IMG/VR virus record: IMGVR_UViG_3300042922_000542
Span: 182,148 to 246,147 of that record
DNA length: 64,000 nucleotides
Reading direction: 5' to 3' (one strand)
Numbering within the stretch: position 1 is the stretch's first letter; every line of letters starts with the position of its first letter. The notes below the pieces were generated by a model. The model did no database searches. It was not told the origin of the DNA and saw only the letters and a list, made by a program, of their open reading frames with translations. The position numbers were made by a program, and so were the translations under genes. Of the stretch, positions 17,624 to 64,000 are shown piece by piece.

Positions 17624-19411
17624 TTAAACAACTTCACCATATACATCAGCACTGTTAAGCATAACAAGTCTTGCCTGAATACCTTGAACAGAGATATCTT
17701 TGTATCTGCTTGTTGCAGTAACAATTGTATATGCTCCGCCAGGTCTATTAGTTGACTCGTACGCTGTTTGACTTTGTGAAGTCATTAAGTGTGAAGTATA
17801 TTTTAAGTGTTTGAAAGAAATATGTTCGTCATCAGTTGGGTAAGCATAGATTCTAAGAACAAGTTCTTTCTTATTTGTTGGAGCTACAGCTGCATCTGTA
17901 TATGCTTTATATACGTTTGATGCAACAACTCTAACCGGTGCACTCATATCTGTTGCAAAACCATATGAGTTGTTTACAGTGATACCACCAACTGATGCTC
18001 CCTGTTGGTAGTTCCATGTTGTCCATTTAGAAATAAGTTGGCAAGCCATTGGGTTACCAGCGATAACAAAGCTTAAGTTATCCAATTTAGCAGCTTCACA
18101 GAGTTTGTATATCAAACCTTTGATGGCAAATTGAACTGCATTTGCTTTGTATATAAATGGATCTCCAGCAAATCCAACCGGTGCTTTAAGATCAACCACA
18201 TGTTCCTGAACAAGTGATTCCAATTTATAGATGTCAGATTTAGTTCCAGCATATTTCTTATATTCATCATCAAGGAATCTAAGAACATTTTGTCCCTCTA
18301 TCATTTCTTGTGTCTTAACTATTTCATCAACCATTCTGTTGTAATAATTAATATCAAGTAATGCAGCAGCATCTTCGATTTCTTCTATTGAGAAAGGCAT
18401 ATTCCATCTTGCACCGTCTTCAATTGTGAATTTTATCAATTCACGTTTTTCTCTAACAGATACAGTTCTTGTATTTAATTCATTTGATAAATATCCTTCG
18501 AATACAACCCCAGTAACTTGAGCGTTGCAAGCAGATACATTAACAGTACCTTTTTTGAAATCAATTTTACCAGATACGCTATCTTTGATTATGGTTCCAT
18601 CATCTGCAACGAAATCAAGATCGCCATTTACAAATGTACCGCCAGTTGAGAATTCAACAGTAATGCCGTTTCCTTTAAGTTTATAAATTTTAGTAGCAAC
18701 TTCAACAGCAACAATTTTGATATTGTATGATAATCTATCTTGACCAGGTATTCCATCAGTAAGATTGTCAATGATATCATATTGATAAGCTGGTACTGCA
18801 ACTACAGTATCTTTTATTACATGACCTTTAGCAGCATCCCAAATCTTTTCCCATGTTCCATCAAATATACATTTTGGATATTCATACTCGTCACCAGTTG
18901 TATTGTCAACAAGATATGTAGTCTTAATGTGTTTTGCAAGGTTAGGAGTCTTAGTAGTTTCCACTTCAATAACATCTTTTATTATTGATTGGAAGAACTG
19001 TTTAGCAAGAGTTGGAAACTCTAATGTAGCGATCGGTAAGAATGAAAGTGTTGAAGCTGATTCATTGTAACTTCTAACTTTAGCATCCCAAAGTCTTTCA
19101 ACGTTTTCAACAAAGCTTTCAATGTGAGGGTCATTTGCAGATGCATTTCTGAATCCCTCGTATATTGGCTGTAATAGGTCTACCTTGTATGATTCCATAA
19201 ATGCTTTGTCGCCTACCATTGCACCTAAGTCACGTTTAATATCAATACCTACGCGGCTTTTGTAAGATTCATATAACTCATTAAAATTTTCCTGGAATGA
19301 TTTCCCAGATCTTGACACCTCAAATGAACTGCGTGAATTTGCAAGGTTTGGTGTTATTGTACCAGCGGATTCTCCGAACCAAGATCCGTTATTATTTCTT
19401 TGATAACTCAT
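17624..19411 (-). CDS. major capsid protein precursor
   Basis: 595 aa; strongly biased codon usage; own late promoter and terminator; ES-rich N-terminal propeptide; jumbo-phage MCP-like SIEEIEDAAAL and IAGNPMACQLI. Confidence 0.75.
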   Translation of the reverse strand: MSYQRNNNGSWFGESAGTITPNLANSRSSFEVSRSGKSFQENFNELYESYKSRVGIDIKRDLGAMVGDKAFMESYKVDLLQPIYEGFRNASANDPHIESFVENVERLWDAKVRSYNESASTLSFLPIATLEFPTLAKQFFQSIIKDVIEVETTKTPNLAKHIKTTYLVDNTTGDEYEYPKCIFDGTWEKIWDAAKGHVIKDTVVAVPAYQYDIIDNLTDGIPGQDRLSYNIKIVAVEVATKIYKLKGNGITVEFSTGGTFVNGDLDFVADDGTIIKDSVSGKIDFKKGTVNVSACNAQVTGVVFEGYLSNELNTRTVSVREKRELIKFTIEDGARWNMPFSIEEIEDAAALLDINYYNRMVDEIVKTQEMIEGQNVLRFLDDEYKKYAGTKSDIYKLESLVQEHVVDLKAPVGFAGDPFIYKANAVQFAIKGLIYKLCEAAKLDNLSFVIAGNPMACQLISKWTTWNYQQGASVGGITVNNSYGFATDMSAPVRVVASNVYKAYTDAAVAPTNKKELVLRIYAYPTDDEHISFKHLKYTSHLMTSQSQTAYESTNRPGGAYTIVTATSRYKDISVQGIQARLVMLNSADVYGEVV

Positions 19412-20104: not shown

Positions 20105-22855
20105 TTAGATGATTCTAGCAATTTTCTTACCGCCGTCGACACGAAGTAATTTTTTAGTCACTTCACGTTTAATTCTAATTAATTGATATTTTGCAGTATT
20201 ATCACCATTGTTCGCAGCATCTTTAATCTTCTCATCTATAATTTCGAGTTCGGCTTTTAATTCACCGATCATCTCATTACGAATACGAAATTGATTTTTA
20301 TCATTAGTGATTTTGTTGGTGATAGCTAAAAACATAAATACTGGATTGAATAGTAATTTAGCTTTTAATAAAGAGCCGGTCATGATAGCATTCCTAATGG
20401 CTCTATATAAATTCTGCCTTGAACGAGGATCTGCCATTTTTTCTTTCATTTGATTCTCATTCAAATCTTTCCATTGATTAAGCATACCATTTATCCATCC
20501 AACGGTACGAGTTGTTGGTTTCATAAATGTTTTACCAACATTAATTGCACTCTGCACAGTCTTTTTTATTTCCTGTTGCTTTCCACTTAAATTCCTGTCA
20601 ATATCCATCAATGTATCTCTTATCGGATGATCCGATTCTGGTTTAGCAGGTTCTTCAGTTGATTCGATAATCACATCAAATATACTATCGGAATTTGATT
20701 CATTATCGTTTAATAATGGTTCTATATCATCAGAATTGATGATCGATGATTCATTGAATACTTGATTATTTAAAAATGCTTTAGCACTCATAATCATTTG
20801 TACTTCTATGACAGCATATTTTTGTAAAGCTTCATATGCAGTATCATATATACCATCAACATCATCATCTTCATTCATATCCTCAGGACCTTTAGATACC
20901 AACTTAGCATTTATTATATATCGCCAAATTCCACCATTATCATCTCCGGGCAAATCATCACCAAGGTCAACTATTGCAAATGAAATATCATTGGTTGATA
21001 ATTTTTTAAGTGCATTATTAAGTTTAACGATGTTTGATTTTTGAATAACACCTGTTAACATATCGCCTACAAATATTAATGTATCCTCATTATGCATCTC
21101 TTTTTTATCGCCGGCCCAACCGAAATAAGCTTTAATTGGTTCTTCGATTTCAACGCCACCATCAGTGGATTTATAGAAATATTTTAAAATACTATCTGAA
21201 TCAATATTGTCAAAGTGTGTTTGGAAATATTTGCTGGCTAATTCAATATATGGTTTAAGATTCTTTATTGTAGTACCAATTATTTTTGATACCATTTCAC
21301 ATACATATTTGGCCTCTTTTTTAGTCATTACAGCAGCATATGTTATCACACCAACTATTCCAATACCAAATATTACGATGGGTGCAAACAATGTTATCAT
21401 AATTAATGTGGATAATATTGTCATGATAGCACCTTCACTCATAGGTTTAGGTTGAACATCAATACCATCCATTATATCAATAGAAAACATGTCAGTTGAT
21501 TCAGTCTTTGTTTCATCAGATTTGGTATCAACATTATATGACAATGTCGAATGTGTTGAATGATCATCATTACGATGTTTATTAAATGAATTATTATAAG
21601 TATAATAATAATTATTAACTTGACCATCATGTTTTAACGACGGTTTAGAATCATCGTCAACCTTGTCATTATCTTTAACAATAATTTTAGCTGGCGTAAT
21701 ATCATCAGGCACTGGTTGTTTGATATAATCTGTTGGTTTTAAATCAGCATTAATCTCTGTCTCTGGTGCGATAGTAGATTGTTGATCATTATCATCTTCG
21801 CCATATGATAAAATTTGATGCTGTTTCAGATAATCTGGTAATTTACCATATTTTTTATCCCTAGTAGATTCAATTAATCCAGGAATATCTTGTTTAGATA
21901 ATACTTTTTTACTAACAGTTGTTGGGGGTAGCATATCAACGATATCAGCACATGATTCATTTTCAGGAAGTAAACCATCAAATTCTTCATATATCGATAT
22001 TATGTCATCTTCGATTGCTTTGATATCATCAAAATTCTCCAACGTAGTCATATAATATTCTTTAAATGAAATATAATCATGCATATGATTAATTTCTTCT
22101 TCAGTATACTCAATGAATTTCTCTTCATCCATCAGAACTGATTCTTTATGGAGAATAGCATTTTTTAATTTAATTGATTTGACAATACCCTCTAATGACT
22201 CTTCTGTGAATTTCTTTTTTAAGGTATTTAATTTGTCGGAAGGTGATTTAATATCCTTTGATGCTTCCAGCAGCCATTGATATAAGGTTGGATTACCATC
22301 AGAACTATTAACAGCTTCTGATAAAAATTGAAATACTATATCAGCCTTATTATTTCTTTCAGCTGTAATGATAACATCGGGAATCGCAGCTTCACCAAAT
22401 TGAGATAATACCTTAGGTATATTTGAATTGAAATATTCATTATAGTATAATTTAGTATATTCATCATGAGATGCATCCAGTTCATCTTTATATGCCTCAA
22501 ACATAATAAATGAATTTTTATATTCATTCTTAAATGACTCCAACATTTCTTTAGATTCATTATAAATACTAGAATCAATACCACGGTATTTACACTGTTT
22601 GATAGCATTGTCAAATGATTCCATAATACTATCATATTTAATTAACGGGATACCATATTTTTCAATAAATTCTCTAAATGTTTTTACACCATGATTAGAT
22701 GTAATTATATATTCTAGATTTGATGCATAAAGATATGGATCATTTTGTAGAGAATTATTTACGGCTTCAATGTAATTATTAATATCAGATTGCAAGCCTG
22801 AAGATTTAGCTGATTGATACAATAATTTTATATCTTTCAAATTAATCAACTCCAT
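20105..22855 (-). CDS. large putative internal head protein
   Basis: More than 10 xxE-S/A motifs, an internal hydrophobic segment and a C-terminal coiled coil; CACA-N6-TA at 22887-22898. Confidence 0.6.
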   Translation of the reverse strand: MELINLKDIKLLYQSAKSSGLQSDINNYIEAVNNSLQNDPYLYASNLEYIITSNHGVKTFREFIEKYGIPLIKYDSIMESFDNAIKQCKYRGIDSSIYNESKEMLESFKNEYKNSFIMFEAYKDELDASHDEYTKLYYNEYFNSNIPKVLSQFGEAAIPDVIITAERNNKADIVFQFLSEAVNSSDGNPTLYQWLLEASKDIKSPSDKLNTLKKKFTEESLEGIVKSIKLKNAILHKESVLMDEEKFIEYTEEEINHMHDYISFKEYYMTTLENFDDIKAIEDDIISIYEEFDGLLPENESCADIVDMLPPTTVSKKVLSKQDIPGLIESTRDKKYGKLPDYLKQHQILSYGEDDNDQQSTIAPETEINADLKPTDYIKQPVPDDITPAKIIVKDNDKVDDDSKPSLKHDGQVNNYYYTYNNSFNKHRNDDHSTHSTLSYNVDTKSDETKTESTDMFSIDIMDGIDVQPKPMSEGAIMTILSTLIMITLFAPIVIFGIGIVGVITYAAVMTKKEAKYVCEMVSKIIGTTIKNLKPYIELASKYFQTHFDNIDSDSILKYFYKSTDGGVEIEEPIKAYFGWAGDKKEMHNEDTLIFVGDMLTGVIQKSNIVKLNNALKKLSTNDISFAIVDLGDDLPGDDNGGIWRYIINAKLVSKGPEDMNEDDDVDGIYDTAYEALQKYAVIEVQMIMSAKAFLNNQVFNESSIINSDDIEPLLNDNESNSDSIFDVIIESTEEPAKPESDHPIRDTLMDIDRNLSGKQQEIKKTVQSAINVGKTFMKPTTRTVGWINGMLNQWKDLNENQMKEKMADPRSRQNLYRAIRNAIMTGSLLKAKLLFNPVFMFLAITNKITNDKNQFRIRNEMIGELKAELEIIDEKIKDAANNGDNTAKYQLIRIKREVTKKLLRVDGGKKIARII

Positions 22856-39714: not shown

Positions 39715-40530
39715 TTATTTTGTTTCTTCAGCTGCTTCAACTTCTTCTTTAGTAGGCAGCTCAACCTCTTTAACATCTTCTCTCTTAGTATCAACTACGA
39801 GAATATATCCGAAGCCATCTGCACCTTTTGCTTTTTTACCATAAAAATCAGGCAATGTTAATCCACACTTAATTGCATTAAATGTTAAATCCCCAATTTG
39901 ATCTGCAAATTTTTGTTTGTAATGTTCAATTGCTTCAGCTGTTTCATTTTCATGACAGAAGAAAACTCCACACATTTGCCATACGACTGGATTTATTTTA
40001 GAAATTCCTGTCCATTTTCTCTGAATGCCTTTACCGGAGCTACCAACATAAGCTCTAGCATAGATATATGATAAAACTGAAATAGGTTTTAATGAATATT
40101 TATTATCCTTGGCACCATTATCAATAATGTCTTTGATTTTCGCAACAGCATCCTTAATTTTTTCTTTATTTTCTTTAGTTGCAGATTCATAATATGGACC
40201 GCTGCAATATGATTCCATTATTGCAGATTCCGTAAATCTCATCTGTTTGTCTTCAACAGTTTCAGCAACTGGGCGTACTGTCTTTAATGTATCAAAAGCT
40301 TCATTAAAACTTTTCTTAATGTCATCAATAGCCTTATTGTAAACATCTTCTGAAATTTCTGTTTTAGCAGGTACATTGATTGATACATCCAGTCCAAAAT
40401 TTTCCTTTAATTCTGGATTACCGCTTGACAAGTTCTCTTTTGTTTCAGGTATAGTAGATTCTAATATATTAATAGAAAATATATCGTCAGTCATACCATC
40501 TTGGTTTAAATTAACATTATTATTACTCAT
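39715..40530 (-). CDS. putative internal head protein
   Basis: ILEST, FTESAIMESY and YYESAT motifs; CACA-N6-TA at 40594-40605. Confidence 0.6.
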   Translation of the reverse strand: MSNNNVNLNQDGMTDDIFSINILESTIPETKENLSSGNPELKENFGLDVSINVPAKTEISEDVYNKAIDDIKKSFNEAFDTLKTVRPVAETVEDKQMRFTESAIMESYCSGPYYESATKENKEKIKDAVAKIKDIIDNGAKDNKYSLKPISVLSYIYARAYVGSSGKGIQRKWTGISKINPVVWQMCGVFFCHENETAEAIEHYKQKFADQIGDLTFNAIKCGLTLPDFYGKKAKGADGFGYILVVDTKREDVKEVELPTKEEVEAAEETK

Positions 40531-40628: not shown

Positions 40629-41948
40629 TCATTCAAAATCATATATCCTTTTAATCATCTCATTTATATAATCATGAGATACCGTAATTAATAGACGGTA
40701 TGTTTTATGTGGATTTGGATTAAGGATATGTAATATTCGTTCGTTCCAATCTATATAGAATGATTCACTATTTACAATGGCACCGTTCTCCCTGAACTGA
40801 AATTGTATGAACCGATCAATCGGTATACCTAATTTTAGGTGATAATCTAATACCGTCCTAAGAGAATTATTTAATATTTCATTTATCGATATTGTGTTTT
40901 CGTTTTGGGCTAATTTAAATATTGGAAATCCCAGTATAGACCATCCTACAGGAAGATGAAAATCATCTAAAGCAATAGTATCTGTAAATATTGGAACTAT
41001 GGCTTTATCTGCCGGACATGTTATATTTACATTCTCTTTAAGTTCTGGAGCATTCAACATGAAATACCCAATTGTATTAAACTCACATCTTACCGTAAAG
41101 GCAATATCAAAGTTACGTCTAATCTGACCGTCTTTGATACCTTGATTTGCTACAGGCTCTTGTACAACTGTATCAATATCAGATAAATAATACATGAAGA
41201 ACTCATCCGAATTGGATCCGCCCTTTAATTTATATGTGATCGGATGATACCATATTGAATTCATATAAGTTAAATATTTATAAACTGAATTTTCATCTTG
41301 GTCATTAACAGGAACACCTGCTAAGTTTGACAATAATGCATTAAATTCATCTGGGATATATAATTCTAATGGTGCTTTAATGAAGAAGTTATGACCAATA
41401 GGGATCATGTTGTGTATAAATGACATCCAATTAGTTTGCTCCATAAATGTATGAAACCCTAATACGACATCAATATACATTACGGCTCTATTATAATGTC
41501 CATGCACATGAATTCTGTTATATTTATCATTTGCCAATGGTATTAAAGAACTTTCACCCCATGTATTAAATGTATTGGTAATTCTTGAATTTATAATTGT
41601 ATTTGCTAAAAATCTATTATCGTCTTGACCAAAACTGATTCTAGGCGCTAATACCATAGATGGCATTTCCATTTTGACAATTTGACTTGGCGTATGTCTC
41701 AGTTGTCGACTAGCCAGCGTGGTAGTTGCAGTAACAGTTTTAAATAAATCTTTAGGGAATAAGTCGAGAATATATTTCTCAACAACTGATAATACATTGC
41801 CGTATGTATGCGCCGCTGATGTATTGCATACCGCGGCAGTATTCTTAATATGATCACCAAATTCAGCTCCTGGATTTCGTTCATACTGCACGCCTGCATA
41901 ATGAATATCTGGGTTTGCTACTGAAGGATTTGTATTATATTCTCGCAT
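40629..41948 (-). CDS. putative virion structural protein (neck/tail-completion-like)
   Basis: 439 aa, beta-rich, in an operon with the baseplate gene; specific function not assignable. Confidence 0.5.
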   Translation of the reverse strand: MREYNTNPSVANPDIHYAGVQYERNPGAEFGDHIKNTAAVCNTSAAHTYGNVLSVVEKYILDLFPKDLFKTVTATTTLASRQLRHTPSQIVKMEMPSMVLAPRISFGQDDNRFLANTIINSRITNTFNTWGESSLIPLANDKYNRIHVHGHYNRAVMYIDVVLGFHTFMEQTNWMSFIHNMIPIGHNFFIKAPLELYIPDEFNALLSNLAGVPVNDQDENSVYKYLTYMNSIWYHPITYKLKGGSNSDEFFMYYLSDIDTVVQEPVANQGIKDGQIRRNFDIAFTVRCEFNTIGYFMLNAPELKENVNITCPADKAIVPIFTDTIALDDFHLPVGWSILGFPIFKLAQNENTISINEILNNSLRTVLDYHLKLGIPIDRFIQFQFRENGAIVNSESFYIDWNERILHILNPNPHKTYRLLITVSHDYINEMIKRIYDFE

Positions 41949-41966
41949 CTGTGTTTACACACCACC

Positions 41967-43151
41967 TTATACCACTTTTTTCCCGGGACTAGGGTCCAAT
42001 ATACCGTGAATTATACTATATATTGTAGTTTTAGCTTTAATTGCCCAAGCTCTATCATCAATATATTGCTTAGTAAATTCAATAACTTCAGCAGACATCG
42101 TTTGAAATACTGTAGTTAACTTTGTAACAGCGGAGATATATCTAGCATATAATTCAGCATTATCATTAATTTTAGCTAAAGCTTCTTCTTCCATATATTC
42201 TTTATCTTCACCAGGTCGAATCTGATAGTAGTCATGTGATAAATAATATTCAATCGTGATATTATTGTGTTTCATATAATCAATCCCGATTGTTCCCTTT
42301 ACTATCTTTTTTCGAGCCGCTTCAATTTCTGTAATTAATGCATTAATATTATTTATAACCTTATTAGCATTATCAGGGTCAATACGAATTATATCTATAA
42401 ATTTATAATCTATATTTATTGGATCGGTCTGACTTCCACCATTCTTACTCCATAATGTTTTTCTGAATTTATCCAGGTAGTTAGAAAAATCATGAACTGT
42501 TTCCGGCGCATCAATGATTACATGATCCTTAATTAATTCATCTAATATAGGTACTAACCTTTGACCAGCAGCATCCATCTTTCCCGTTAAACGTTCAATA
42601 TTTTGTTGTAATTTATCTATCTCCTTATTCTTAGCACTAATATTGTGGAAGTGTTCATCTTTTAGTATTTGTTTAAAACGTTCAGATTCTCTTAATTCTG
42701 AGAGAGCCTTCCTTAACTTTCCATTCACCTCTACCATGTCTTCAAAATGTTCTTCACGCACTTTTTCCAATAATGCTAACAGTGAATCATGTTCTATCTG
42801 CAATGTTTTAATTTGTTCATTTTGTTGATTTGTAAATACATTTATTATATTATGCCAGAATGTTTTTAATGATAATACAATACGTTTCCACATAGCAGCA
42901 ATTTTATCAACAAGATTTTTTTTACGAGTTTCTATTTTACTTTTAAATACTGACATATTGGTTGATTCATTCATATTAGTTAATAATAAATCATCAGTGC
43001 TACATATATTAGCACACCTATGCATATAATCTAAAGACGTAATTTCAAATTCTAGACATTCTCTTTGTAACTGATAATTGCTATCACTATGCTCAAATGC
43101 TAATGACTCTTTAATGTAATCTCCTAGAGATAACATTGATACATTTTCCAT
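41967..43151 (-). CDS. putative internal head protein
   Basis: IKES and MNES motifs, then amphipathic helix VDKIAAMWKRIVLSLKTFW and a coiled coil. Confidence 0.6.
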   Translation of the reverse strand: MENVSMLSLGDYIKESLAFEHSDSNYQLQRECLEFEITSLDYMHRCANICSTDDLLLTNMNESTNMSVFKSKIETRKKNLVDKIAAMWKRIVLSLKTFWHNIINVFTNQQNEQIKTLQIEHDSLLALLEKVREEHFEDMVEVNGKLRKALSELRESERFKQILKDEHFHNISAKNKEIDKLQQNIERLTGKMDAAGQRLVPILDELIKDHVIIDAPETVHDFSNYLDKFRKTLWSKNGGSQTDPINIDYKFIDIIRIDPDNANKVINNINALITEIEAARKKIVKGTIGIDYMKHNNITIEYYLSHDYYQIRPGEDKEYMEEEALAKINDNAELYARYISAVTKLTTVFQTMSAEVIEFTKQYIDDRAWAIKAKTTIYSIIHGILDPSPGKKVV

Positions 43152-44487: not shown

Positions 44488-45462
44488 TTATTTCTTTAGT
44501 ATTCCTGCAAGTCCTACTATAACTTGCATTCTGTAGTTATTTACGGCAGTGTATAAAGCTATACAGTGCGCCATAGTTGAACTTGTATCTTCAAAGAATT
44601 TCTGACCTAACTCTGACATTTTACCTTTGTAATCTTTGTCAAGATTTAAGTTTTCAATTTTGAATCTATAAGCTTCAAGCTGTTTAATTAATTCATCAAT
44701 AGTTCCTGAATCAGCACTAACTACGATACCGCGTGTACGGCTTTCATTTATGTATCTTTCAAGAACCTTTTGAAGTGTTTCTACACCTTTTTCATTGTCT
44801 TCGGTTAAATTTTTAGCAACTTTATCGAAGAATTTATTGATATGTCTTTCAGCGATAGCCATGTTATAAGGTCCATCTGATGCTATAGTAGTTTGAATCT
44901 TTCTGTTAACAAGAGCTGCAGCTAATTTGTCTTTAATTGCATTATCATTCCACTTTAATATGTTGCTTGGCAACTTATGGAATCCTTCAACTTGTTTTTC
45001 AGAAATTGGAGCTCCAGATGTTTCAATAGCAGCTTCAACAACTTTCTTTATAGCTTCTTTGTCTGCATCAGTAACTTCATTTAAAGCAGTTAATTTTCTA
45101 ACAACATCTTCTGCCTTAGCTGATACATCTTTCATCTTCTTGCCTAAGTTCTTTAAGAATGAAATGAATCCATTCCATATCTTTAGTATCCATGCTTTCG
45201 CATCACCCATGAACTTTTTAGCTTTATCAGTATATTTAGATTCTAATAATGCAATAGCATCATTTCCTTGTGATTCAAATAAGAATCCTTCAGTTAAATA
45301 TGATGCTGATTCTGTAACTAATGTTGCATTTTCTGCAAGGAACTTCTGACTATCAATGTATCCCTCCATCAATGTTAATTCACTAGCTTCCTTCATGAAC
45401 TTATAATTTTCCTGACTGTGCTTAAATAACTCACACTCAACCATGAAATCTTTAATTGTCAT
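44488..45462 (-). CDS. abundant putative internal head protein
   Basis: VTESASYLTEGFLFESQ..LLES followed by an amphipathic helix; leader nearly identical to the major capsid leader. Confidence 0.65.
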   Translation of the reverse strand: MTIKDFMVECELFKHSQENYKFMKEASELTLMEGYIDSQKFLAENATLVTESASYLTEGFLFESQGNDAIALLESKYTDKAKKFMGDAKAWILKIWNGFISFLKNLGKKMKDVSAKAEDVVRKLTALNEVTDADKEAIKKVVEAAIETSGAPISEKQVEGFHKLPSNILKWNDNAIKDKLAAALVNRKIQTTIASDGPYNMAIAERHINKFFDKVAKNLTEDNEKGVETLQKVLERYINESRTRGIVVSADSGTIDELIKQLEAYRFKIENLNLDKDYKGKMSELGQKFFEDTSSTMAHCIALYTAVNNYRMQVIVGLAGILKK

Positions 45463-57612: not shown

Positions 57613-58230
57613 ATGGAAAATAAAATTATTGAATTATATACAGATGGGTCATCATTAGGAAATCCGGGACCATCTGGTTTAGGTTATGTAATTAGATATT
57701 GGGAATCTAAAAAAGAAGGGGAACCTCCAGTTGCAAATAATATCGAGGGAAGTCAGGGTTTCAAATTAAGTACTAATAATCGTATGGAAATTATGGCCGG
57801 CATATATGGAATTGAATATATATTGGAACTCATCTCTGTTAAAATGCTTAACGGTGTTGAAAAAATCCAGTTGTCTACGGATTCTAAATATTTTTGTGAT
57901 GCTGTAGTACGCGGTTGGTTAGATAAATGGCAACAAAATAATTGGATTACATCATCTCAAACACCTGTTAAAAATAAGGATCTATGGGAGAAAGTAGTAG
58001 CCGTTTTAAATAAACTTAAACAGCAAAATATATCTCTTAACATTAGTTATATTCCAGGTCACCAAGGTTACGAATTCAATGAGCTTGCTGACAAATTATG
58101 TACTGCGGCATCAAATGATAGTCAAAATCATATGATTGATGAAGTATATGAATCAACAATGAGTAAACCTGCATTCGGTGGTTATAAAAAATATAATAAC
58201 TATAATAATTATAAGAGCTATAATAAATAA
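57613..58230 (+). CDS. rnhA: ribonuclease HI
   Basis: YTDGSSLGNPGP, TNNRME, TDSKY, KNKDLW, GHQG..NELAD. Confidence 0.95.
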   Translation: MENKIIELYTDGSSLGNPGPSGLGYVIRYWESKKEGEPPVANNIEGSQGFKLSTNNRMEIMAGIYGIEYILELISVKMLNGVEKIQLSTDSKYFCDAVVRGWLDKWQQNNWITSSQTPVKNKDLWEKVVAVLNKLKQQNISLNISYIPGHQGYEFNELADKLCTAASNDSQNHMIDEVYESTMSKPAFGGYKKYNNYNNYKSYNK

Positions 58231-58821: not shown

Positions 58822-59631
58822 TTAATATGCATAGAAATCCTGTTGGTCATCCAATCTAAGAGCGCATAAGTTAAACGGATTTATACGATTACCGTTCTTA
58901 TCAAACTTTAAACCTGCGCATCCAATATCAATGTTTATAAATTTTATATTCATAGATTGCCACGTTATAACTTCTGCACTATAATCTGATTTAATCGGTA
59001 ATTTACCATTCATAACTGGTGTATGCCCATGCACTATTATTTTACCGGCATAATTATCTCTCAATTTATTTAAATCAATATTGGCATCATATATAGGTTC
59101 CTTATTTTTATTAATACCTATTGTGCGGGCCCATGTAGATTGGTATAATAATAGATCTGGTCGGCAATTACTTGAAACAGTATTCGTTGGCATCGAATGA
59201 CATAACGTATATTCCACCCCATTAAGTTCAACTGACGCCTCAGCAATAAGGTCATTGAAAAATTCCCCAACTATCTTTTGTTCAAATATATCTATATGAT
59301 CTAATTCTTGAATTGTTTTATCCCCGCCATTATTTAACCATATTGATAGATGCGATGTTTTATTTTTAGGCATAGGCTTTTTATTAACGGCTGTTTCTAT
59401 TAATTCAAGTGAATCCATCATTAATAATTCATGATTACCGATTAACGTTGTGACATTACATTTAGATTTTAATTCAGTTATGTATTTAATGACACCCATA
59501 GAATCAGGTCCACGGTCGATATAATCCCCTAGAAATATTATATGATCTTCACTCTTTATGTCTAATTTATTAATCAATCTGATTAGTGTACTCAATTGAC
59601 CATGGATATCTCCTATTGCATATATCGCCAT
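58822..59631 (-). CDS. PPP-family Ser/Thr protein phosphatase (lambda NinI-like metallophosphoesterase)
   Basis: GDIHG, GDYIDRG, GNHE, HGHTP, NIDIGC. Confidence 0.92.
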   Translation of the reverse strand: MAIYAIGDIHGQLSTLIRLINKLDIKSEDHIIFLGDYIDRGPDSMGVIKYITELKSKCNVTTLIGNHELLMMDSLELIETAVNKKPMPKNKTSHLSIWLNNGGDKTIQELDHIDIFEQKIVGEFFNDLIAEASVELNGVEYTLCHSMPTNTVSSNCRPDLLLYQSTWARTIGINKNKEPIYDANIDLNKLRDNYAGKIIVHGHTPVMNGKLPIKSDYSAEVITWQSMNIKFINIDIGCAGLKFDKNGNRINPFNLCALRLDDQQDFYAY

Positions 59632-60620: not shown

Positions 60621-60650
60621 AAATATGATGGGAATTAACCCATCATATTT
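60621..60650 (-). terminator. intrinsic terminator overlapping the sbcD stop
   Basis: AAATATGATGGG/CCCATCATATTT. Confidence 0.75.
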
Positions 60651-61782
60651 TTAATTCTTCATTAATTAAACTACTCAATTCTTCTATGGATATATCAACA
60701 TCGTAATTTTTATTTATGTATCTATGTATTTTATCTTCCAAACATAATGATGCATCCAATATAAAATCAAATTCAGTTTCAATTTCATCTTCTTTTATTA
60801 TAGCATTCAACGACGGTTCATTAAATATGCATGTTATTGATTTATCTTCAATTAATAGTGATTTTATATTTTCCTTAAATGAAGCGTCAATATTATTTGG
60901 GAATTTAAATTTCAATCGAATCTTACCAATTTTATTACCATTGAATATATCTTCATGCATCGATTTGATTTTATTTACTTCGCTAACAAGTTTATTCATA
61001 TCACTATATAATTCGGAATCTTCATCAAATGTATATGTTTTGTATAAATACGCTTCATTATTTTCAACAAAAGTAAATTTATTATCTTCAATTATACCAT
61101 AACCCTTGGCTTCCTCTTCACCAAATGAATTCCTAAATAAAGATCCGACATAATAACATTCATCATTCATATCACAATATGTATGATAATGACCAAATAA
61201 ACATATGTCTGATATTGATGATAATTCATTCGACTTAAATATCGGAACTTTTTTCTCCTTAGATGTTGAAGCATATTCAACGGGATTCACCATGGTCATA
61301 CCTTCGGCTATCACACCATGCCCAAATATATAATTATATCTTTTATCGGAATAAAGATAATCTTTATAATATTCAAATTTATCATCAACATATTCCTCAG
61401 GTAAATATAATACATTGATATTTGGATATATTTCTTCTTCAGTAACAGTAGTTATTAATTTAATATCAATTGATTTATTGGTAAAATGATAATTGAATAA
61501 ACGATATTGTTGCATTTCATGGCTTTCAGTCCCATATACAATTCTTATTTTTGTTTTTGATTTTTTACATAACCTGATAAGGTATGACATAACGTTTATA
61601 GCTAATGATGTGCAATCATCATTAACCTTAAACAACTTATCAAAATAATCACCTAATATTACAACTACATCTGTATGATTAAATACTAATTCTTTATCTA
61701 ATATATCTGTAATTATATTATACACATAATTCGTATCTTTTATGGATCCGATATGAATATCTGCAAAGTTCAAAATTCTCAT
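60643..61782 (-). CDS. sbcD: SbcD/Mre11-like nuclease (T4 gp47-like)
   Basis: ADIHIG, LGDYFD, GTESHE, FGHG, FGHYH, YVGS..FGE. Confidence 0.88.
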   Translation of the reverse strand: MRILNFADIHIGSIKDTNYVYNIITDILDKELVFNHTDVVVILGDYFDKLFKVNDDCTSLAINVMSYLIRLCKKSKTKIRIVYGTESHEMQQYRLFNYHFTNKSIDIKLITTVTEEEIYPNINVLYLPEEYVDDKFEYYKDYLYSDKRYNYIFGHGVIAEGMTMVNPVEYASTSKEKKVPIFKSNELSSISDICLFGHYHTYCDMNDECYYVGSLFRNSFGEEEAKGYGIIEDNKFTFVENNEAYLYKTYTFDEDSELYSDMNKLVSEVNKIKSMHEDIFNGNKIGKIRLKFKFPNNIDASFKENIKSLLIEDKSITCIFNEPSLNAIIKEDEIETEFDFILDASLCLEDKIHRYINKNYDVDISIEELSSLINEELKI

Positions 61783-61844
61783 TTATATAACACTCTCCCC
61801 TTCACATTTATAATATATCGTTAATTTATTAAAGGGAATAAAAA

Positions 61845-61879
61845 AAATAAATGAGGGGATTAAAACCCCTCATTTATTT
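61845..61879 (-). terminator. intrinsic terminator
   Basis: AAATAAATGAGGGG/CCCCTCATTTATTT. Confidence 0.8.
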
Positions 61880-62057
61880 CTCTTGGTATATCATTAATAT
61901 TTTTTACTACTCGTTTTATACGGGGTGCAGTCCAGCTATGTGATAATCCATGTTCTTTATCACATATGATCTCACGATCAGTTACGAATTTGGTATCATA
62001 TTGATCAAGATCATCAGATGTTATGGTATCCGGTTTATCATCATTAATCATTTCCAT
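61860..62057 (-). CDS. small hypothetical protein
   Basis: GGAGG SD. Confidence 0.65.
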   Translation of the reverse strand: MEMINDDKPDTITSDDLDQYDTKFVTDREIICDKEHGLSHSWTAPRIKRVVKNINDIPREINEGF

Positions 62058-62106: not shown

Positions 62107-63543
62107 TTAATATACCTTAAAATTACCATAGTCGACAACTACCATTTTACCATTAATAAAACCAACATTGTCTTCATGCATATCAGCAGTTTGTAATCTT
62201 ATATTTTTATTCTTAAGTGATTTTTCTAATTGCTGTTCAAATTTTCTCATATCATCAAAATCAATATTACGTCGAATTGAAGCTTTTGGAACAATTACAT
62301 ATATACCGCTTTCTGAACTTTCATCTGTCGGTAATGCAAATTTATCAGCAACATCAATATCCTTAGATACAATATTTTTTATCTTTAGATCAAGTTTATT
62401 GTCAAATATACCTTTTCTGTTCCAAGCATATTTATAAACAAATTTATCCCGATCATTAGTTAAAACTGCAATACGGGTTGCTCCACTTGGTGCATCTGAA
62501 ACATCTCTGATCCATTTCTTCGTTTTACATGTTATTATGATAAAAGGTTTAACGATGCTATATGCTCGCATGGTATTTTTAATATCAGAATGTAATATGA
62601 TATGTTCTATTATATCACCGAGCATCTTTCGATCCCGTATTGCAGCTAATTCGAAGTTATCAAATGGATTTTGATATTTAAATGCTATGCATAAATCTAT
62701 ATCTCTTAATACAATATTAATCATATTAAGTGCTGTAGCTAATCCATTTAATATATCAGAAAAATATGGATCGATATTTGGATCATTTTCCATTTCTTTT
62801 ACTTCGGGCATATTTAAGATATTTACAATATGTTCAGTTAACTCATTAGCTTCAGGAAAAAATTCGGCAGTATCTATAGTAAAGTCATAAGAACCTTTAC
62901 GGAATATAGGTATTGTCCTACCAGTGTCACCTAATCTCAATCTTGCTGCTTGAATTAATCCAACATTATCAAATTTAGATTTGATTAATGGTACAACATA
63001 TCGATCAACGATCTTTTTATATTCAGCGATATTGATAATTAGACTACGATCTAATTCAATTATAGCCTCTCCGTTCGACATTTTTATAATGGTTCCAGGT
63101 CCACTGCTATTTACAGTATCTTTGATATCAAAACCATCTTTCGCCTTATTTGCAAAATCTTCAGCTTTCATATTTTTGTATTCAACAGGAATAGCACGTT
63201 TTCTAAAAGGCTTGCGTTCATGTTTAATACCAACTGAATCTAATGCACTTATGACTGTATTTTCGGTTTCTTCCATTTCCTTAATCTGTTTTTCTGCCTT
63301 AGGTTTAAATATATTTTTAATAGAATCACGGATTCGTTTAGCCAATTCAATGATCTTTTTAATTAACCATTTGATTCCTTTAGCTATACTATCGACTCCT
63401 TTACTTATATTTTTACCAATAGTTGATTCCTCAAGTAACATGAGTTCGGCGTCAATATAAGAGAAGTGCTCAGTTATTAAAGAATCATATTCTGTAGATA
63501 GGGATGACTCCTCTGCATCCCTTAAATAAAATTTGTAGCACAC
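62107..63543 (-). CDS. head-protein-type ORF with C-terminal protein-kinase-like domain; probably made as a -1 frameshift extension of the upstream gene
   Basis: SGATRIAV, VYKY, DMHEDN, DYG; no good SD or start codon; overlaps the upstream stop in the -1 frame. Confidence 0.75.
   Translation of the reverse strand: MCYKFYLRDAEESSLSTEYDSLITEHFSYIDAELMLLEESTIGKNISKGVDSIAKGIKWLIKKIIELAKRIRDSIKNIFKPKAEKQIKEMEETENTVISALDSVGIKHERKPFRKRAIPVEYKNMKAEDFANKAKDGFDIKDTVNSSGPGTIIKMSNGEAIIELDRSLIINIAEYKKIVDRYVVPLIKSKFDNVGLIQAARLRLGDTGRTIPIFRKGSYDFTIDTAEFFPEANELTEHIVNILNMPEVKEMENDPNIDPYFSDILNGLATALNMINIVLRDIDLCIAFKYQNPFDNFELAAIRDRKMLGDIIEHIILHSDIKNTMRAYSIVKPFIIITCKTKKWIRDVSDAPSGATRIAVLTNDRDKFVYKYAWNRKGIFDNKLDLKIKNIVSKDIDVADKFALPTDESSESGIYVIVPKASIRRNIDFDDMRKFEQQLEKSLKNKNIRLQTADMHEDNVGFINGKMVVVDYGNFKVY
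63460..63534 (-). promoter_or_regulatory. programmed -1 ribosomal frameshift signal (slippery heptamer plus H-type pseudoknot)
   Basis: A_AAU_UUU (63534-63528), 5-nt spacer, S1 AGGGAUG/CAUCCCU, S2 AGAGGAGU/ACUUCUCU. Confidence 0.75.
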
Positions 63544-64000
63544 TCTGTCAATGTTGATTCATTAATAACAATGCCTTTCCCTAAACGAAGTCTTGTTGTA
63601 TATTCATTCAGTGATGCACCTTTTTGTCTAAACATATCATCAAACTGATTCAATGTAGATTCTCTTATTGCTAATCCAATAGTTTCATCTTGGGATCCAA
63701 CATCTTGTGAATTTTTCATAGACCATTCTGATATATAATCCATTGCAACTTTAAAACTGGAGGATTCAGTTTTAATATTAAAGGACATATCACTCTCATC
63801 CTTCTTATCTTTTAACAACTCAGAAATATCAGCAACAATTTTATTTACAGTTTTCTTCTTTAATTTTTCAATAAAATCTTCATATTCAACGTCTTTCTTA
63901 ACATCAATAAGCTGATTTTCCATATCATCATCTTGATCAGAAATCGGTTCAGGTGGGACATCTAAACCATCATCAGCATCTTCTTTTAATTTTTCCATAG
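63522..64000 (-). CDS. 3' part of a putative head protein (probably begins beyond the window)
   Basis: Acidic, with KTESS, IREST and INEST motifs. Confidence 0.7.
   Translation of the reverse strand, partial: MEKLKEDADDGLDVPPEPISDQDDDMENQLIDVKKDVEYEDFIEKLKKKTVNKIVADISELLKDKKDESDMSFNIKTESSSFKVAMDYISEWSMKNSQDVGSQDETIGLAIRESTLNQFDDMFRQKGASLNEYTTRLRLGKGIVINESTLTECATNFI

What the first reader, a model, noticed from the sequence alone, without database searches (positions are those of the whole stretch)
62107..62520. Minimal protein-kinase-like domain as virion cargo
Seen: the last ~130 aa have a Gly-loop-like SGATRIAV, a beta-3 Lys (VYKY), a catalytic loop DMHEDN and the metal-binding DYG. They sit behind an xxES + amphipathic-helix head-protein module. 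Established: T7 gp0.7 is a phage Ser/Thr kinase that reprograms the host, but it is expressed early rather than packaged. Inference: an injected kinase could act before phage gene expression, for host takeover or anti-defence.
Basis: partly seen in the sequence, partly recalled or inferred. Interest (0 to 1): 0.72.

Follow-up and report, generated by a model that had tools for sequence, protein, structure and literature searches.

The report
Frameshift-fused minimal kinase in jumbo phage
The end of this gene, from an uncultured soil jumbo phage, does encode a stripped-down protein-kinase-like enzyme, and it seems to be made only when ribosomes slip back one base at the end of the preceding late gene, which would tie the enzyme to a probable virus-particle protein; packaging into the particle has not been shown.

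Summary
Window 62110-62580 (minus strand) encodes a 157-aa domain that folds confidently (pLDDT 92). It matches only protein-kinase-like (PKL) structures: APH(2''), Rio, Bud32, Lpg2603 and DYRK. Gly-loop G/R, beta-3 Lys, catalytic Asp and DYG are invariant in 24 homologues (Mg-binding Asn in 23), and the chain ends just after DYG, so the kinase C-lobe is missing.

It does not reach Pfam's cut-off for Kinase-PolyVal and matches neither Pkinase nor T7 kinase. It belongs to a small, unnamed family from uncultured relatives of AR9/PBS1/phiR1-37-type jumbo phages.

- It overlaps the upstream late gene ORF1 (288 aa) in the -1 frame at the heptamer A_AAT_TTT.
- A stop codon and a hairpin follow the heptamer.
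- The same signal sits at the same place in three divergent homologues.
- Two further homologues are in-frame fusions of 757 aa.

ORF1/ORF2 end a terminator-bounded unit that begins with homologues of genes annotated as virion structural. A conserved hydrophobic-x-Glu|Ser site, a motif most enriched in the major capsid protein's N-terminus, precedes a basic 50-kDa mature part.

Virion delivery is therefore plausible but unproven, and the substrate is unknown.

The parts
63522..64000 (-). 3' part of ORF1. The full ORF is 288 aa, acidic (pI 4.8). Its start lies beyond the window end, across the record's 127-bp terminal repeat, at G000:C1 position 515, behind an AAGGAG ribosome-binding site. It is a conserved late gene of this phage clade.
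63528..63534 (-). Slippery heptamer A_AAT_TTT in ORF1's frame, 6 nt before ORF1's stop codon TAA (63522-63524). This is the proposed -1 frameshift site. The shifted product is 287 + 473 = 760 aa.
63500..63522 (-). Stem-loop starting 5 nt after the heptamer (-10.5 kcal/mol, z -2.0). Equivalent hairpins in L002, L005 and L003 have z -3.5, -3.1 and -4.6.
63427..63528 (-). Acidic 34-aa leader (pI 4.05) in the -1 frame, YLRDAEES...AELMLLEE. It is conserved at protein level (20/37 identical to L002). No plausible start codon precedes it, and neither the ATG at 63441 nor the GTG at 63543 has an SD motif.
63424..63435 (-). L-E-E|S, the candidate prohead-protease site. The Glu is invariant in the close family and mostly conserved as x-x-E-[A/S] in the distant family.
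63310..63396 (-). Basic amphipathic helix of the N-terminal module (model helix at residues 16-44 of the 444-aa form).
62581..63309 (-). Second helix, disordered linker and alpha/beta-plus-helical middle region. It is conserved across the family and has no clear fold match.
62110..62580 (-). C-lobe-less PKL (kinase-like) domain. Key codons: beta-3 Lys 62431-62433, catalytic Asp 62182-62184, DYG Asp 62131-62133. Stop codon at 62107-62109.
61860..62057 (-). 65-aa acidic ORF directly downstream. A 53-77-aa ORF follows the kinase gene in all five loci where the downstream DNA is visible.
61840..61884 (-). Strong intrinsic terminator (19-pair stem plus T-run). It closes the unit 637-aa gene, 954-aa gene, ORF1/ORF2, 65-aa ORF.

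Best explanation
ORF2 encodes a phosphotransferase of the protein-kinase-like fold that keeps the ATP-binding N-lobe, the catalytic loop (D-x-H-x-x-N) and the metal-binding DYG, but lacks the whole C-lobe. That much is shown by fold and conservation.

In this phage it is not an independent gene. Ribosomes translating the conserved late gene ORF1 slip -1 on A_AAU_UUU, just before ORF1's stop, helped by a downstream hairpin. A minority of ORF1 chains would thus continue into ORF2 and give a 760-aa fusion. This is strongly inferred from comparative sequence evidence.

The remaining steps are inferred only:
- Because ORF1/ORF2 close an operon of virion-structural gene homologues, the fusion would be built into the particle through its ORF1 part.
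- The phage maturation protease would then cut at L-E-E|S and release a basic 50-kDa protein made of the amphipathic helix, the middle domain and the kinase.
- That protein would enter the cell with the DNA and phosphorylate host, or phage, targets before phage genes are expressed.

Related phages encode the same protein as a stand-alone gene with its own short acidic leader. This fits a cargo module that can be attached to different delivery devices.
For: Kinase fold:
- pLDDT 92.3.
- Only PKL matches among the best hits, with Foldseek E about 2e-4 and probability 1.00, and VIA Z up to 9.7.
- Invariant G, R, K, D and DYG, with N138 in at least 90%.
- Alignment to the KSR catalytic loop and DFG.

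Frameshift:
- Identical heptamer, -1 overlap and hairpin in four loci whose proteins are 38-43% identical.
- In L002 and L005 the -1 frame opens with a TGA right before AAA TTT, so the conserved leader has no start codon.
- The leader is 54% identical between the window and L002.
- No SD motif precedes ATG 63441 or GTG 63543, although 77% of this genome's ORFs have one.
- P0006 and P0007 are in-frame fusions of 757 aa, against 760 aa predicted here.
- Only 1 of 31 in-frame A_AAT_TTT sites in the genome opens a long -1 ORF.
- AAAUUUU just upstream of a stop is called a conventional slippery site in umbraviruses (PMC4737148).

Late or virion context:
- The upstream same-strand genes match phrog_21400 'virion structural protein', and AR9 gp212 and phiR1-37 g208.
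- There is no convincing terminator until 61884-61840; only two weak, chance-level matches lie inside the upstream genes.

Processing:
- The [LIVMFY]-x-E-S count in the first 130 aa is highest in the major capsid protein (4, against 0.29 expected). The next highest are the 916-aa gene beside the capsid gene and three proteins carrying the same N-terminal module.
- Giant-phage head proteins are cut after Glu and carry propeptides that target them into the head (PMC5694885).
- The leader is acidic and the mature part basic.
Against: - There are no virion proteomics for this phage or for any family member.
- ORF1 shows no significant similarity to AR9 gp210 or phiR1-37 g206 (hhalign probability 1%), nor to anything in four isolated relatives.
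- The upstream genes may be baseplate genes (JD-Fnp1 annotation), whereas the xxES logic concerns the head.
- No T4-type prohead protease was detected by Pfam.
- ORF2 itself carries only one conserved site.
- AAAUUUU has not been tested in bacteria, as far as I found.
- An ATG at 63441 exists in all split loci, so some independent initiation cannot be excluded.
- The substrate is unknown, because the best structural matches include small-molecule and RNA kinases.
- With the C-lobe gone, activity may need a partner or may be lost.
Confidence: 0.5

Rival explanations
1. ORF2 is an ordinary separate gene translated from ATG 63441, as the gene caller assumed. It would give a 444-aa late cytoplasmic kinase that is not joined to ORF1 and not packaged, and that acts on phage or host proteins during assembly.
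For: An ATG shortly before the LxE site is present in all four split loci, and all were called that way. Distant relatives are stand-alone genes.
Against: No SD motif precedes the ATG. The 34 codons upstream of the ATG are open and conserved at protein level in every locus, and in two loci they begin exactly at the heptamer. Conserved hairpins follow the heptamer. In-frame fused orthologues exist.
Confidence: 0.15
2. The domain is not a protein kinase. It would be a small-molecule or nucleic-acid phosphotransferase (APH-like, or like the archaeal RNA kinase Ark1), for example modifying a nucleotide signal, an antibiotic-like compound or RNA/DNA ends. This holds whether or not it is packaged.
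For: The highest VIA scores are to APH(2'') enzymes (Z 9.7, 9.0). The 173-aa RNA kinase Ark1 aligns with the lowest rmsd (2.8 A, Z 8.4). The protein-substrate-binding C-lobe is absent. The gene lies next to DNA-metabolism genes (SbcD-like here, and SbcD-like plus helicase near JD-Fnp1 gp15).
Against: Protein kinases (Rio, TTK, DYRK, ULK4, Lpg2603) score equally well. The only sequence-level similarities are to protein kinases, namely KSR and Kinase-PolyVal. A PPP-type protein phosphatase is linked to the family in two phages.
Confidence: 0.2
3. The frameshift is a tail-assembly-chaperone-type (lambda G/GT, P2 E/E+E') device. The long form would be an assembly factor that is absent from the finished particle.
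For: There is a conserved -1 frameshift inside a tail/baseplate-like gene block.
Against: No tape-measure gene follows. In AR9 the tape measure lies on the other strand (gp203, 167311-173088), about 4 kb from gp210, ORF1's positional equivalent. The extension is 473 aa with an enzyme fold, against about 140 aa for T domains. Most ORF1 homologues have no extension and end at a terminator.
Confidence: 0.03
4. The split is decay. A formerly fused gene would have acquired a frameshift mutation, and ORF2 would be a dying remnant.
For: Fused versions exist.
Against: Four lineages 38-43% identical keep the same heptamer, hairpin, open -1 frame and all catalytic residues. Four independent assemblies exclude a sequencing error.
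Confidence: 0.02

Closest known systems
Kinase-PolyVal (Pfam PF18762), the C-lobe-less Ser/Thr/Tyr-type kinase domains of phage and conjugative-element 'polyvalent proteins' (Iyer et al. 2017, PMC5512222)
   Same: The entire C-terminal kinase subdomain is lost while the ATP-binding and phosphotransfer residues are kept. Both are phage-borne, and both are predicted to travel with the DNA and act on host proteins. The weak Pfam match is collinear to the end of the model (positions 116-153 of 160).
   Different: The score is 14 bits against a 27-bit cut-off, and only 1 of 24 family members hits at all. [quoted passage not shown] Delivery here would be by a frameshift fusion to a conserved late protein. 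I did not examine the family's other two signature features.
Phage T7 gp0.7 protein kinase (T7K)
   Same: It is a phage PKL-fold kinase. T7K phosphorylates host and phage proteins very broadly and disarms defences (PMC13645617), which gives a functional precedent.
   Different: T7K is an early-expressed protein with a DPV motif in place of DFG, followed by a C-terminal shut-off/DNA-binding domain. Here the motif is DYG and the chain stops there. No Pfam hit to any T7-kinase model at E <= 0.1 in any family member. The Atlas feature similarity is only a lead (0.93, 157 shared features).
Small atypical PKL enzymes: Rio1/Rio2, Bud32, APH(2''), Legionella Lpg2603, archaeal Ark1
   Same: These are the best structural matches. 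They cover the N-lobe, the catalytic loop and the DFG-equivalent, with Z 8-10 and TM 0.5-0.6.
   Different: Sequence identity is 8-19%. All of them except Ark1 keep C-terminal helices after the DFG. None is a member of this family by sequence.
T4 Alt and internal proteins (capsid-targeting sequence cut by gp21), and the propeptide-bearing ejection proteins of phiKZ, 201phi2-1 and SPN3US
   Same: The resemblance is in the proposed logic: an N-terminal targeting segment removed after a Glu, leaving an enzyme or basic protein that is co-packaged with the DNA and injected (PMC5694885).
   Different: Neither packaging nor cleavage has been shown here. The targeting part would be a whole 288-aa protein joined by frameshifting, not a short peptide. 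There is no sequence homology.
-1 programmed frameshifts that make a minor extended form of a structural protein: T7 capsid 10A/10B, lambda G/GT, retroviral Gag-Pol
   Same: An X_XXY_YYZ heptamer next to the upstream stop, a 5-6-nt spacer and a downstream stem-loop, giving a fixed ratio of short to long product.
   Different: It is in a jumbo phage. The extension is an enzyme, as in Gag-Pol, rather than a structural or chaperone domain. I did not find this case described.

Membership tests
Protein-kinase-like (PKL) fold superfamily | Five-stranded N-lobe sheet plus alpha-C helix, followed by a catalytic loop and a metal-binding loop | tested here: met
   AF2 pLDDT 92.3. The best-ranked PDB matches are PKL enzymes by Foldseek and by VIA.
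Protein-kinase-like (PKL) fold superfamily | Catalytic residue set: beta-3 Lys, alpha-C acidic residue, catalytic Asp, Asn, and the Asp of DFG | tested here: met
   K50, D133 and D150 are invariant, and N138 is at least 90% conserved. D/E sits three residues after the nearly invariant N61, inside model helix 55-71, in nearly all of 24 sequences. The profile aligns with KSR HKDLKxxN...DFG.
Canonical Ser/Thr/Tyr protein kinase (Pfam Pkinase PF00069) | Complete C-lobe with activation segment/APE and helices F-I, and a score above the Pfam cut-off | tested here: not met
   The chain ends 7 residues after DYG. No PF00069 match anywhere in the genome at E <= 10.
Kinase-PolyVal (PF18762) | Score above the Pfam gathering cut-off (27 bits) | tested here: not met
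   14 bits, E 0.051, last 38 residues only. 1 of 24 family members hits.
Kinase-PolyVal (PF18762) | Loss of the whole C-terminal subdomain with active-site residues retained | tested here: met
   definition taken from PMC5512222
Kinase-PolyVal (PF18762) | Insert between the conserved His and Asp; Glu before strand 2; Gln in the last N-lobe strand | not tested
   The definition comes from PMC5512222. I did not map these three features onto alignment A2 or onto the model. No family alignment was available for a profile-profile test.
T7 gp0.7-type kinase | Sequence match to a Pfam T7-kinase model; DPV motif in place of DFG | tested here: not met
   No Pfam hit at E <= 0.1 in any of 24 members. 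The motif is DYG. The DPV motif of T7K is from PMC13645617.
-1 programmed ribosomal frameshift site | X_XXY_YYZ heptamer in the upstream frame, inside the overlap with a -1 ORF | tested here: met
   A_AAT_TTT in the window, L002, L003 and L005. It is unique among 31 such heptamers in the genome in opening a long -1 ORF.
-1 programmed ribosomal frameshift site | Stimulatory RNA structure 5-9 nt downstream | tested here: met
   Stem-loops start 3-6 nt after the heptamer (5 in the window and L002, 6 in L003, 3 in L005's minimum-energy fold). Their z-scores are -2.0, -3.5, -3.1 and -4.6.
-1 programmed ribosomal frameshift site | Trans-frame protein actually made | not testable with these tools
   Only one public run holds the region, a soil metagenome that may be the source sample. 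There are no proteomic data.
Head proteins processed by a prohead protease (T4 CTS / phiKZ-type propeptides) | N-terminal propeptide ending in the phage's x-x-Glu cleavage motif | tested here: inconclusive
   A conserved L-x-E|S/A precedes the helix. The motif is enriched in the MCP N-terminus. The protease and its specificity in this phage have not been identified.
Head proteins processed by a prohead protease (T4 CTS / phiKZ-type propeptides) | Presence in purified virions | not testable with these tools
   The phage is uncultured. The family has no match in AR9, phiR1-37 or LPJP1, and only a divergent member in JD-Fnp1, whose role is unknown.

The most novel reading that the evidence does not exclude
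This would be a Gag-Pol-like packaging device in a tailed phage. A -1 ribosomal frameshift would append an enzyme cargo (a C-lobe-less kinase) to a fixed fraction of an abundant, conserved virion-assembly protein. A set number of kinase molecules would thus be built into each particle, cut free by the maturation protease, and injected to phosphorylate host targets before any phage gene is read. The same cargo module occurs in sister phages with its own leader or as an in-frame fusion, which would show modular exchange of delivery devices.
Probability: 0.3. Interest if true: 0.8.

Novelty: new variant of a known kind. Interest (0 to 1): 0.62.

Why it matters
Phage kinases have recently been shown to act as broad anti-defence weapons (T7K; PMC13645617). 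C-lobe-less kinases predicted to be injected with phage DNA have been known only from computational work (PMC5512222).

This locus offers a compact, testable case. It has a 157-aa catalytic core with all active-site residues. It shows three natural expression formats of the same cargo: frameshift fusion, in-frame fusion and stand-alone with its own leader. It also has a linked PPP-type phosphatase.

If the frameshift product is packaged, that would be a new way for tailed phages to dose an enzyme into the particle, and a natural template for loading foreign proteins into jumbo-phage virions. It also corrects the annotation: the 444-aa gene call hides a probable 760-aa trans-frame protein.

Tried and rejected
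- tblastn and megablast of the protein and region, and tblastn of two homologues, against 50,697 phage records found nothing.
- An IMG/VR scan with the close-family alignment found no relative. The domain alignment was too diverse for that tool.
- A word-index search with the domain alignment gave nothing.
- The kinase gene has no paralogue in the genome.
- The ORF1 profile compared with AR9 gp210 / phiR1-37 g206, its positional equivalents, gave hhalign probability 1%.
- The ORF1 profile found nothing in AR9, phiR1-37, LPJP1 or JD-Fnp1.
- The Atlas look-up for an ORF1 homologue returned a poorly folded model (pLDDT 0.44) and no meaningful neighbour.
- AR9 gp209, annotated 'kinase' and lying next to the syntenic block, has a P-loop-type GVGKT motif and showed no similarity to ORF1 or ORF2 in the phmmer comparison.
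- The full-length model's N-terminal and middle parts gave only generic helical matches.
- Pfam Peptidase_S77 (T4 prohead protease) was not found in the genome.
- Complex prediction of the kinase part with the downstream 65-aa protein gave no answer, so it counts neither for nor against binding.
- The annotated mature N-terminus of phiR1-37 g199 (residue 56) follows A-L-T-E in my translation, but the residue there reads Glu, not Asp. I therefore use it only as a weak hint about protease specificity.
Full report
**What the window is.** The window is the last 64 kb of a 246,147-bp virus record with a 127-bp terminal repeat. GC content is 30%. The only public run that holds the region is a soil metagenome.
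- The window carries a major head protein (17624-19411), a large terminase, a tail sheath, a multisubunit-RNAP beta subunit, a DnaB-like helicase and a polymerase.
- Its structural proteins find their nearest isolated relatives among the AR9/PBS1, phiR1-37, Staphylococcus S6/MarsHill, Listeria LPJP1 and Fusobacterium JD-Fnp jumbo phages, at 23-30% identity.

**The observation.**
- Pfam gives only a sub-threshold, collinear hit of the last 38 residues to Kinase-PolyVal (E 0.051, 14 bits against a cut-off of 27). PHROGs gives phrog_4301, of unknown function (E 6e-9).
- An exhaustive HMMER scan of 1.84 billion representatives found 24 proteins. Four are close (41-54% identity in the domain). About twenty are distant (21-27% identity), mostly 420-520 aa long with the domain at the C-terminus, plus a few small stand-alone versions.
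- In the 24-sequence domain alignment G33, R36, K50, D133, G140 and D150-Y-G are invariant, and A52, G57, N61 and N138 are nearly so.
- AlphaFold2 on this alignment gives pLDDT 92.3 and pTM 0.85.
- Foldseek against the PDB returns Lpg2603, Rio2, TTK, DYRK1A, Bud32 and CK2 (E from 2e-4, probability 1.00).
- The Foldseek-independent VIA scan returns APH(2'') at Z 9.7 and 9.0, then ULK4, Rio2, Bud32, RIOK3 and the 173-aa RNA kinase Ark1, with 24 chains at Z >= 8.
- A profile search of PDB sequences aligns aDlhegNvGlingklViiDYG with KSR's kDLKskNVfydnGKvVItDFG.
- The fold, and the placement of the catalytic Asp, Asn and DFG-equivalent, are therefore established. The chain stops 7 residues after DYG, so the C-lobe is absent.
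- BFVD shows many small uncharacterised phage proteins with the same truncated fold, for example in RaK2, CBB, Lacusarx and PaMx11. The ESM Atlas shows 130-190-aa relatives carrying APH, Kdo or RIO1 Pfam labels.

**The gene is not what the gene caller thought.**
- Two homologues (P0006 and P0007, 757 aa) align over their first ~300 residues with the ORF upstream of the target (63522..63998) and over the rest with the target.
- That upstream ORF1 runs past the window end. Joined across the terminal repeat it is 288 aa, starting MNNKLIESYD behind AAGGAG.
- ORF1 ends ACA AAT TTT ATT TAA, and the target's frame is the -1 frame, open from just upstream.
- The heptamer A_AAT_TTT therefore lies in the overlap, 6 nt before the stop.
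- The contigs of the three other split homologues (L002, L003, L005; proteins 38-43% identical to the window's) carry the same heptamer at the same place. In L002 and L005 the -1 frame has a TGA immediately before AAA TTT.
- The 34-36 codons between the heptamer and the first ATG are open in all four. They are 54% identical between the window and L002, higher than the proteins overall.
- Each locus has a stem-loop starting 3-6 nt after the heptamer, with z-scores of -2.0, -3.5, -3.1 and -4.6 against shuffles.
- Neither ATG 63441 nor GTG 63543 has an SD-like motif, although 77% of ORFs of at least 100 aa in this genome do.
- Of 31 in-frame A_AAT_TTT sites in the genome's ORFs, only this one opens a long -1 ORF: 475 codons, with 31 as the next longest.
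- The predicted trans-frame product is 287 + 473 = 760 aa, against 757 aa in the natural fusions.
- AAAUUUU just upstream of a stop codon is described as a conventional slippery site in two umbraviruses (PMC4737148).
- I rate a programmed -1 frameshift at about 0.85. Four independent assemblies exclude a sequencing error.

**What ORF1 is.**
- ORF1 belongs to a family of at least 65 proteins, mostly about 300 aa, on metagenomic contigs of up to 264 kb.
- In three loci examined it stands alone and is followed by a terminator. The kinase extension is therefore an addition in one subclade.
- ORF1 always follows homologues of the window genome's 637-aa and 954-aa genes (L007:3380-5290 and L007:544-3405, minus strand).
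- The 637-aa protein matches phrog_21400 'virion structural protein', and AR9 gp212 and phiR1-37 g208. Its apparent positional counterpart in JD-Fnp1 is annotated baseplate wedge protein.
- On the minus strand there is no convincing terminator from the 637-aa gene to a 19-pair terminator at 61884-61840, just after the 65-aa ORF that follows the kinase. ORF1/ORF2 are thus the tail end of a structural-gene unit.
- ORF1 itself is acidic (pI 4.8), and a homologue models poorly (Atlas pLDDT 0.44).
- ORF1 shows no significant similarity to its positional equivalents AR9 gp210 and phiR1-37 g206, nor to anything in four isolated relatives. Its place in the particle, if any, is unknown.

**Evidence bearing on packaging.**
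- The N-terminus of the kinase protein has an acidic leader ending in L-E-E|S. The Glu is invariant in the close family and recurs as x-x-E-[A/S] in most distant members.
- A basic amphipathic helix follows. The part after the site is a basic 50-kDa protein with pI 9.0.
- Counting [LIVMFY]-x-E-S in the first 130 residues of all 246 ORFs gives a background of 0.29 per protein.
- The top scorers are the major head protein (4 sites, all within its first 115 residues), the 271-aa protein at 39715-40530 (4), the 916-aa protein beside the capsid gene (3), and the 324-aa and 394-aa proteins at 44488-45462 and 41967-43151 (3 and 2).
- The 324-aa and 394-aa proteins are also among the best non-self hits of an HMM of the family's N-terminal module, and the 271-aa protein is a weaker one. 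All these hits are weak, with per-domain E-values of 0.005-0.35.
- Giant-phage and T4 prohead proteases cut after Glu and remove propeptides that target proteins into the head (PMC5694885).
- This makes hydrophobic-x-E|S a credible maturation site and the module a credible head-protein signature. It remains an inference. No protease was identified, and the ORF2 leader carries just one conserved site of this kind.

**Relatives with another layout.**
- In contigs L013 (284 kb) and L015, whose genes are strongly homologous to the window's, family members are stand-alone genes with their own leader. They lie between the homologues of window genes 40629-41948 and 39715-40530.
- L013 has two tandem paralogues, both with intact catalytic motifs. 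They flank a Metallophos phosphatase homologous to the window's PPP/NinI-like phosphatase at 58822-59631 (phmmer E 3e-18).
- Fusobacterium phage JD-Fnp1 gp15 (326 aa, 'hypothetical') is a divergent member with a different architecture. AR9, phiR1-37 and LPJP1 have none.

**Comparison with what is known.**
- Iyer et al. (PMC5512222) described kinase domains of phage 'polyvalent proteins' that have lost the whole C-terminal subdomain but keep the active site. They proposed that these travel with the DNA and modify host proteins, with the T7 kinase as precedent. The present domain is the same kind of object.
[quoted passage not shown] I did not examine that family's other signature features.
- It is not a T7K relative by any test I could run. 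T7K has a DPV motif and is followed by a C-terminal domain.
- I did not find a -1 frameshift that appends an enzyme to a late phage protein described in the literature searches. The closest analogies are T7 10A/10B, lambda G/GT and retroviral Gag-Pol.

**Verdict.**
- Kinase-like fold: about 0.95.
- Catalytically competent: about 0.7.
- Made by -1 frameshifting from ORF1: about 0.85.
- Virion-packaged: about 0.5.
- Acts on host proteins at entry: about 0.35.

This is a new variant of a known kind, with a testable and unusual mode of expression.

Noticed in passing
window 58822-59631 (-): PPP/NinI-like Ser/Thr phosphatase (Pfam Metallophos 4.5e-18, phrog_246 5.6e-34) on the same strand, about 2.5 kb downstream of the kinase gene. 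In the related contig L013 its homologue lies between two tandem kinase-family paralogues. This may be a kinase-phosphatase pairing.
   Followed up: partly
window 44488-45462 (-), 41967-43151 (-), 39715-40530 (-); genome G000:C1:34372-35394 (-): Proteins with acidic leaders carrying repeated hydrophobic-x-E-S sites, followed by a Trp-rich amphipathic helix like the kinase protein's N-terminus but with other C-terminal parts. They may be a set of cargo proteins sharing one targeting module. HMM support is weak.
   Followed up: partly
window 17624-19411 (-) and 20105-22855 (-): The major head protein has four hydrophobic-x-E-S sites, all in its first 115 residues. The adjacent 916-aa protein has three between about residues 75 and 110. 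This looks like propeptides cut at several sites, as in phiKZ-type heads.
   Followed up: partly
window 63522-64000 and G000:C1:1-515: ORF1 is split by the ends of the record. The 127-bp 'direct terminal repeat' falls inside a gene, so it is more likely an assembly overlap of a circular or permuted map than a physical genome end.
   Followed up: yes
window 61860-62057 (-); L003 3419-3652, L004 12328-12534, L005 2208-2369, L006 12329-12535: A 53-77-aa ORF follows the kinase gene wherever the downstream DNA is visible. These ORFs fall into two sequence groups that are weakly linked. Their function is unknown.
   Followed up: partly
window 60643-61782 (-), 57613-58230 (+): An SbcD/Mre11-like metallophosphoesterase lies right after the terminator. 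Further along, on the other strand, is an ORF whose sequence (DGSSLGNPGPSG...) looks like RNase H, though I ran no family scan on it. In JD-Fnp1 a gene annotated 'putative DNA double strand break repair' and a helicase also lie next to the divergent kinase-family gene gp15.
   Followed up: no
L007 5361-9104 (+), i.e. G000:C1:5361-9104: A 1248-aa tail-fibre-like protein, divergently transcribed from the structural unit, with more than 15 'YYS-DG-x-W' repeats that suggest a large beta-propeller receptor-binding part.
   Followed up: no
L007 14919-16727 (-): A 603-aa radical-SAM protein (phrog_1802, 7e-56) near the structural genes.
   Followed up: no
L020 5776-6756 (-) = Fusobacterium phage JD-Fnp1 gp15: This 'hypothetical protein' of an isolated phage is a divergent member of the kinase-like family (N-lobe E 3e-11). 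It has DIG in place of DYG and four extra residues within the catalytic-loop motif (between its His and Asn). It is a culturable system in which the family could be studied.
   Followed up: partly
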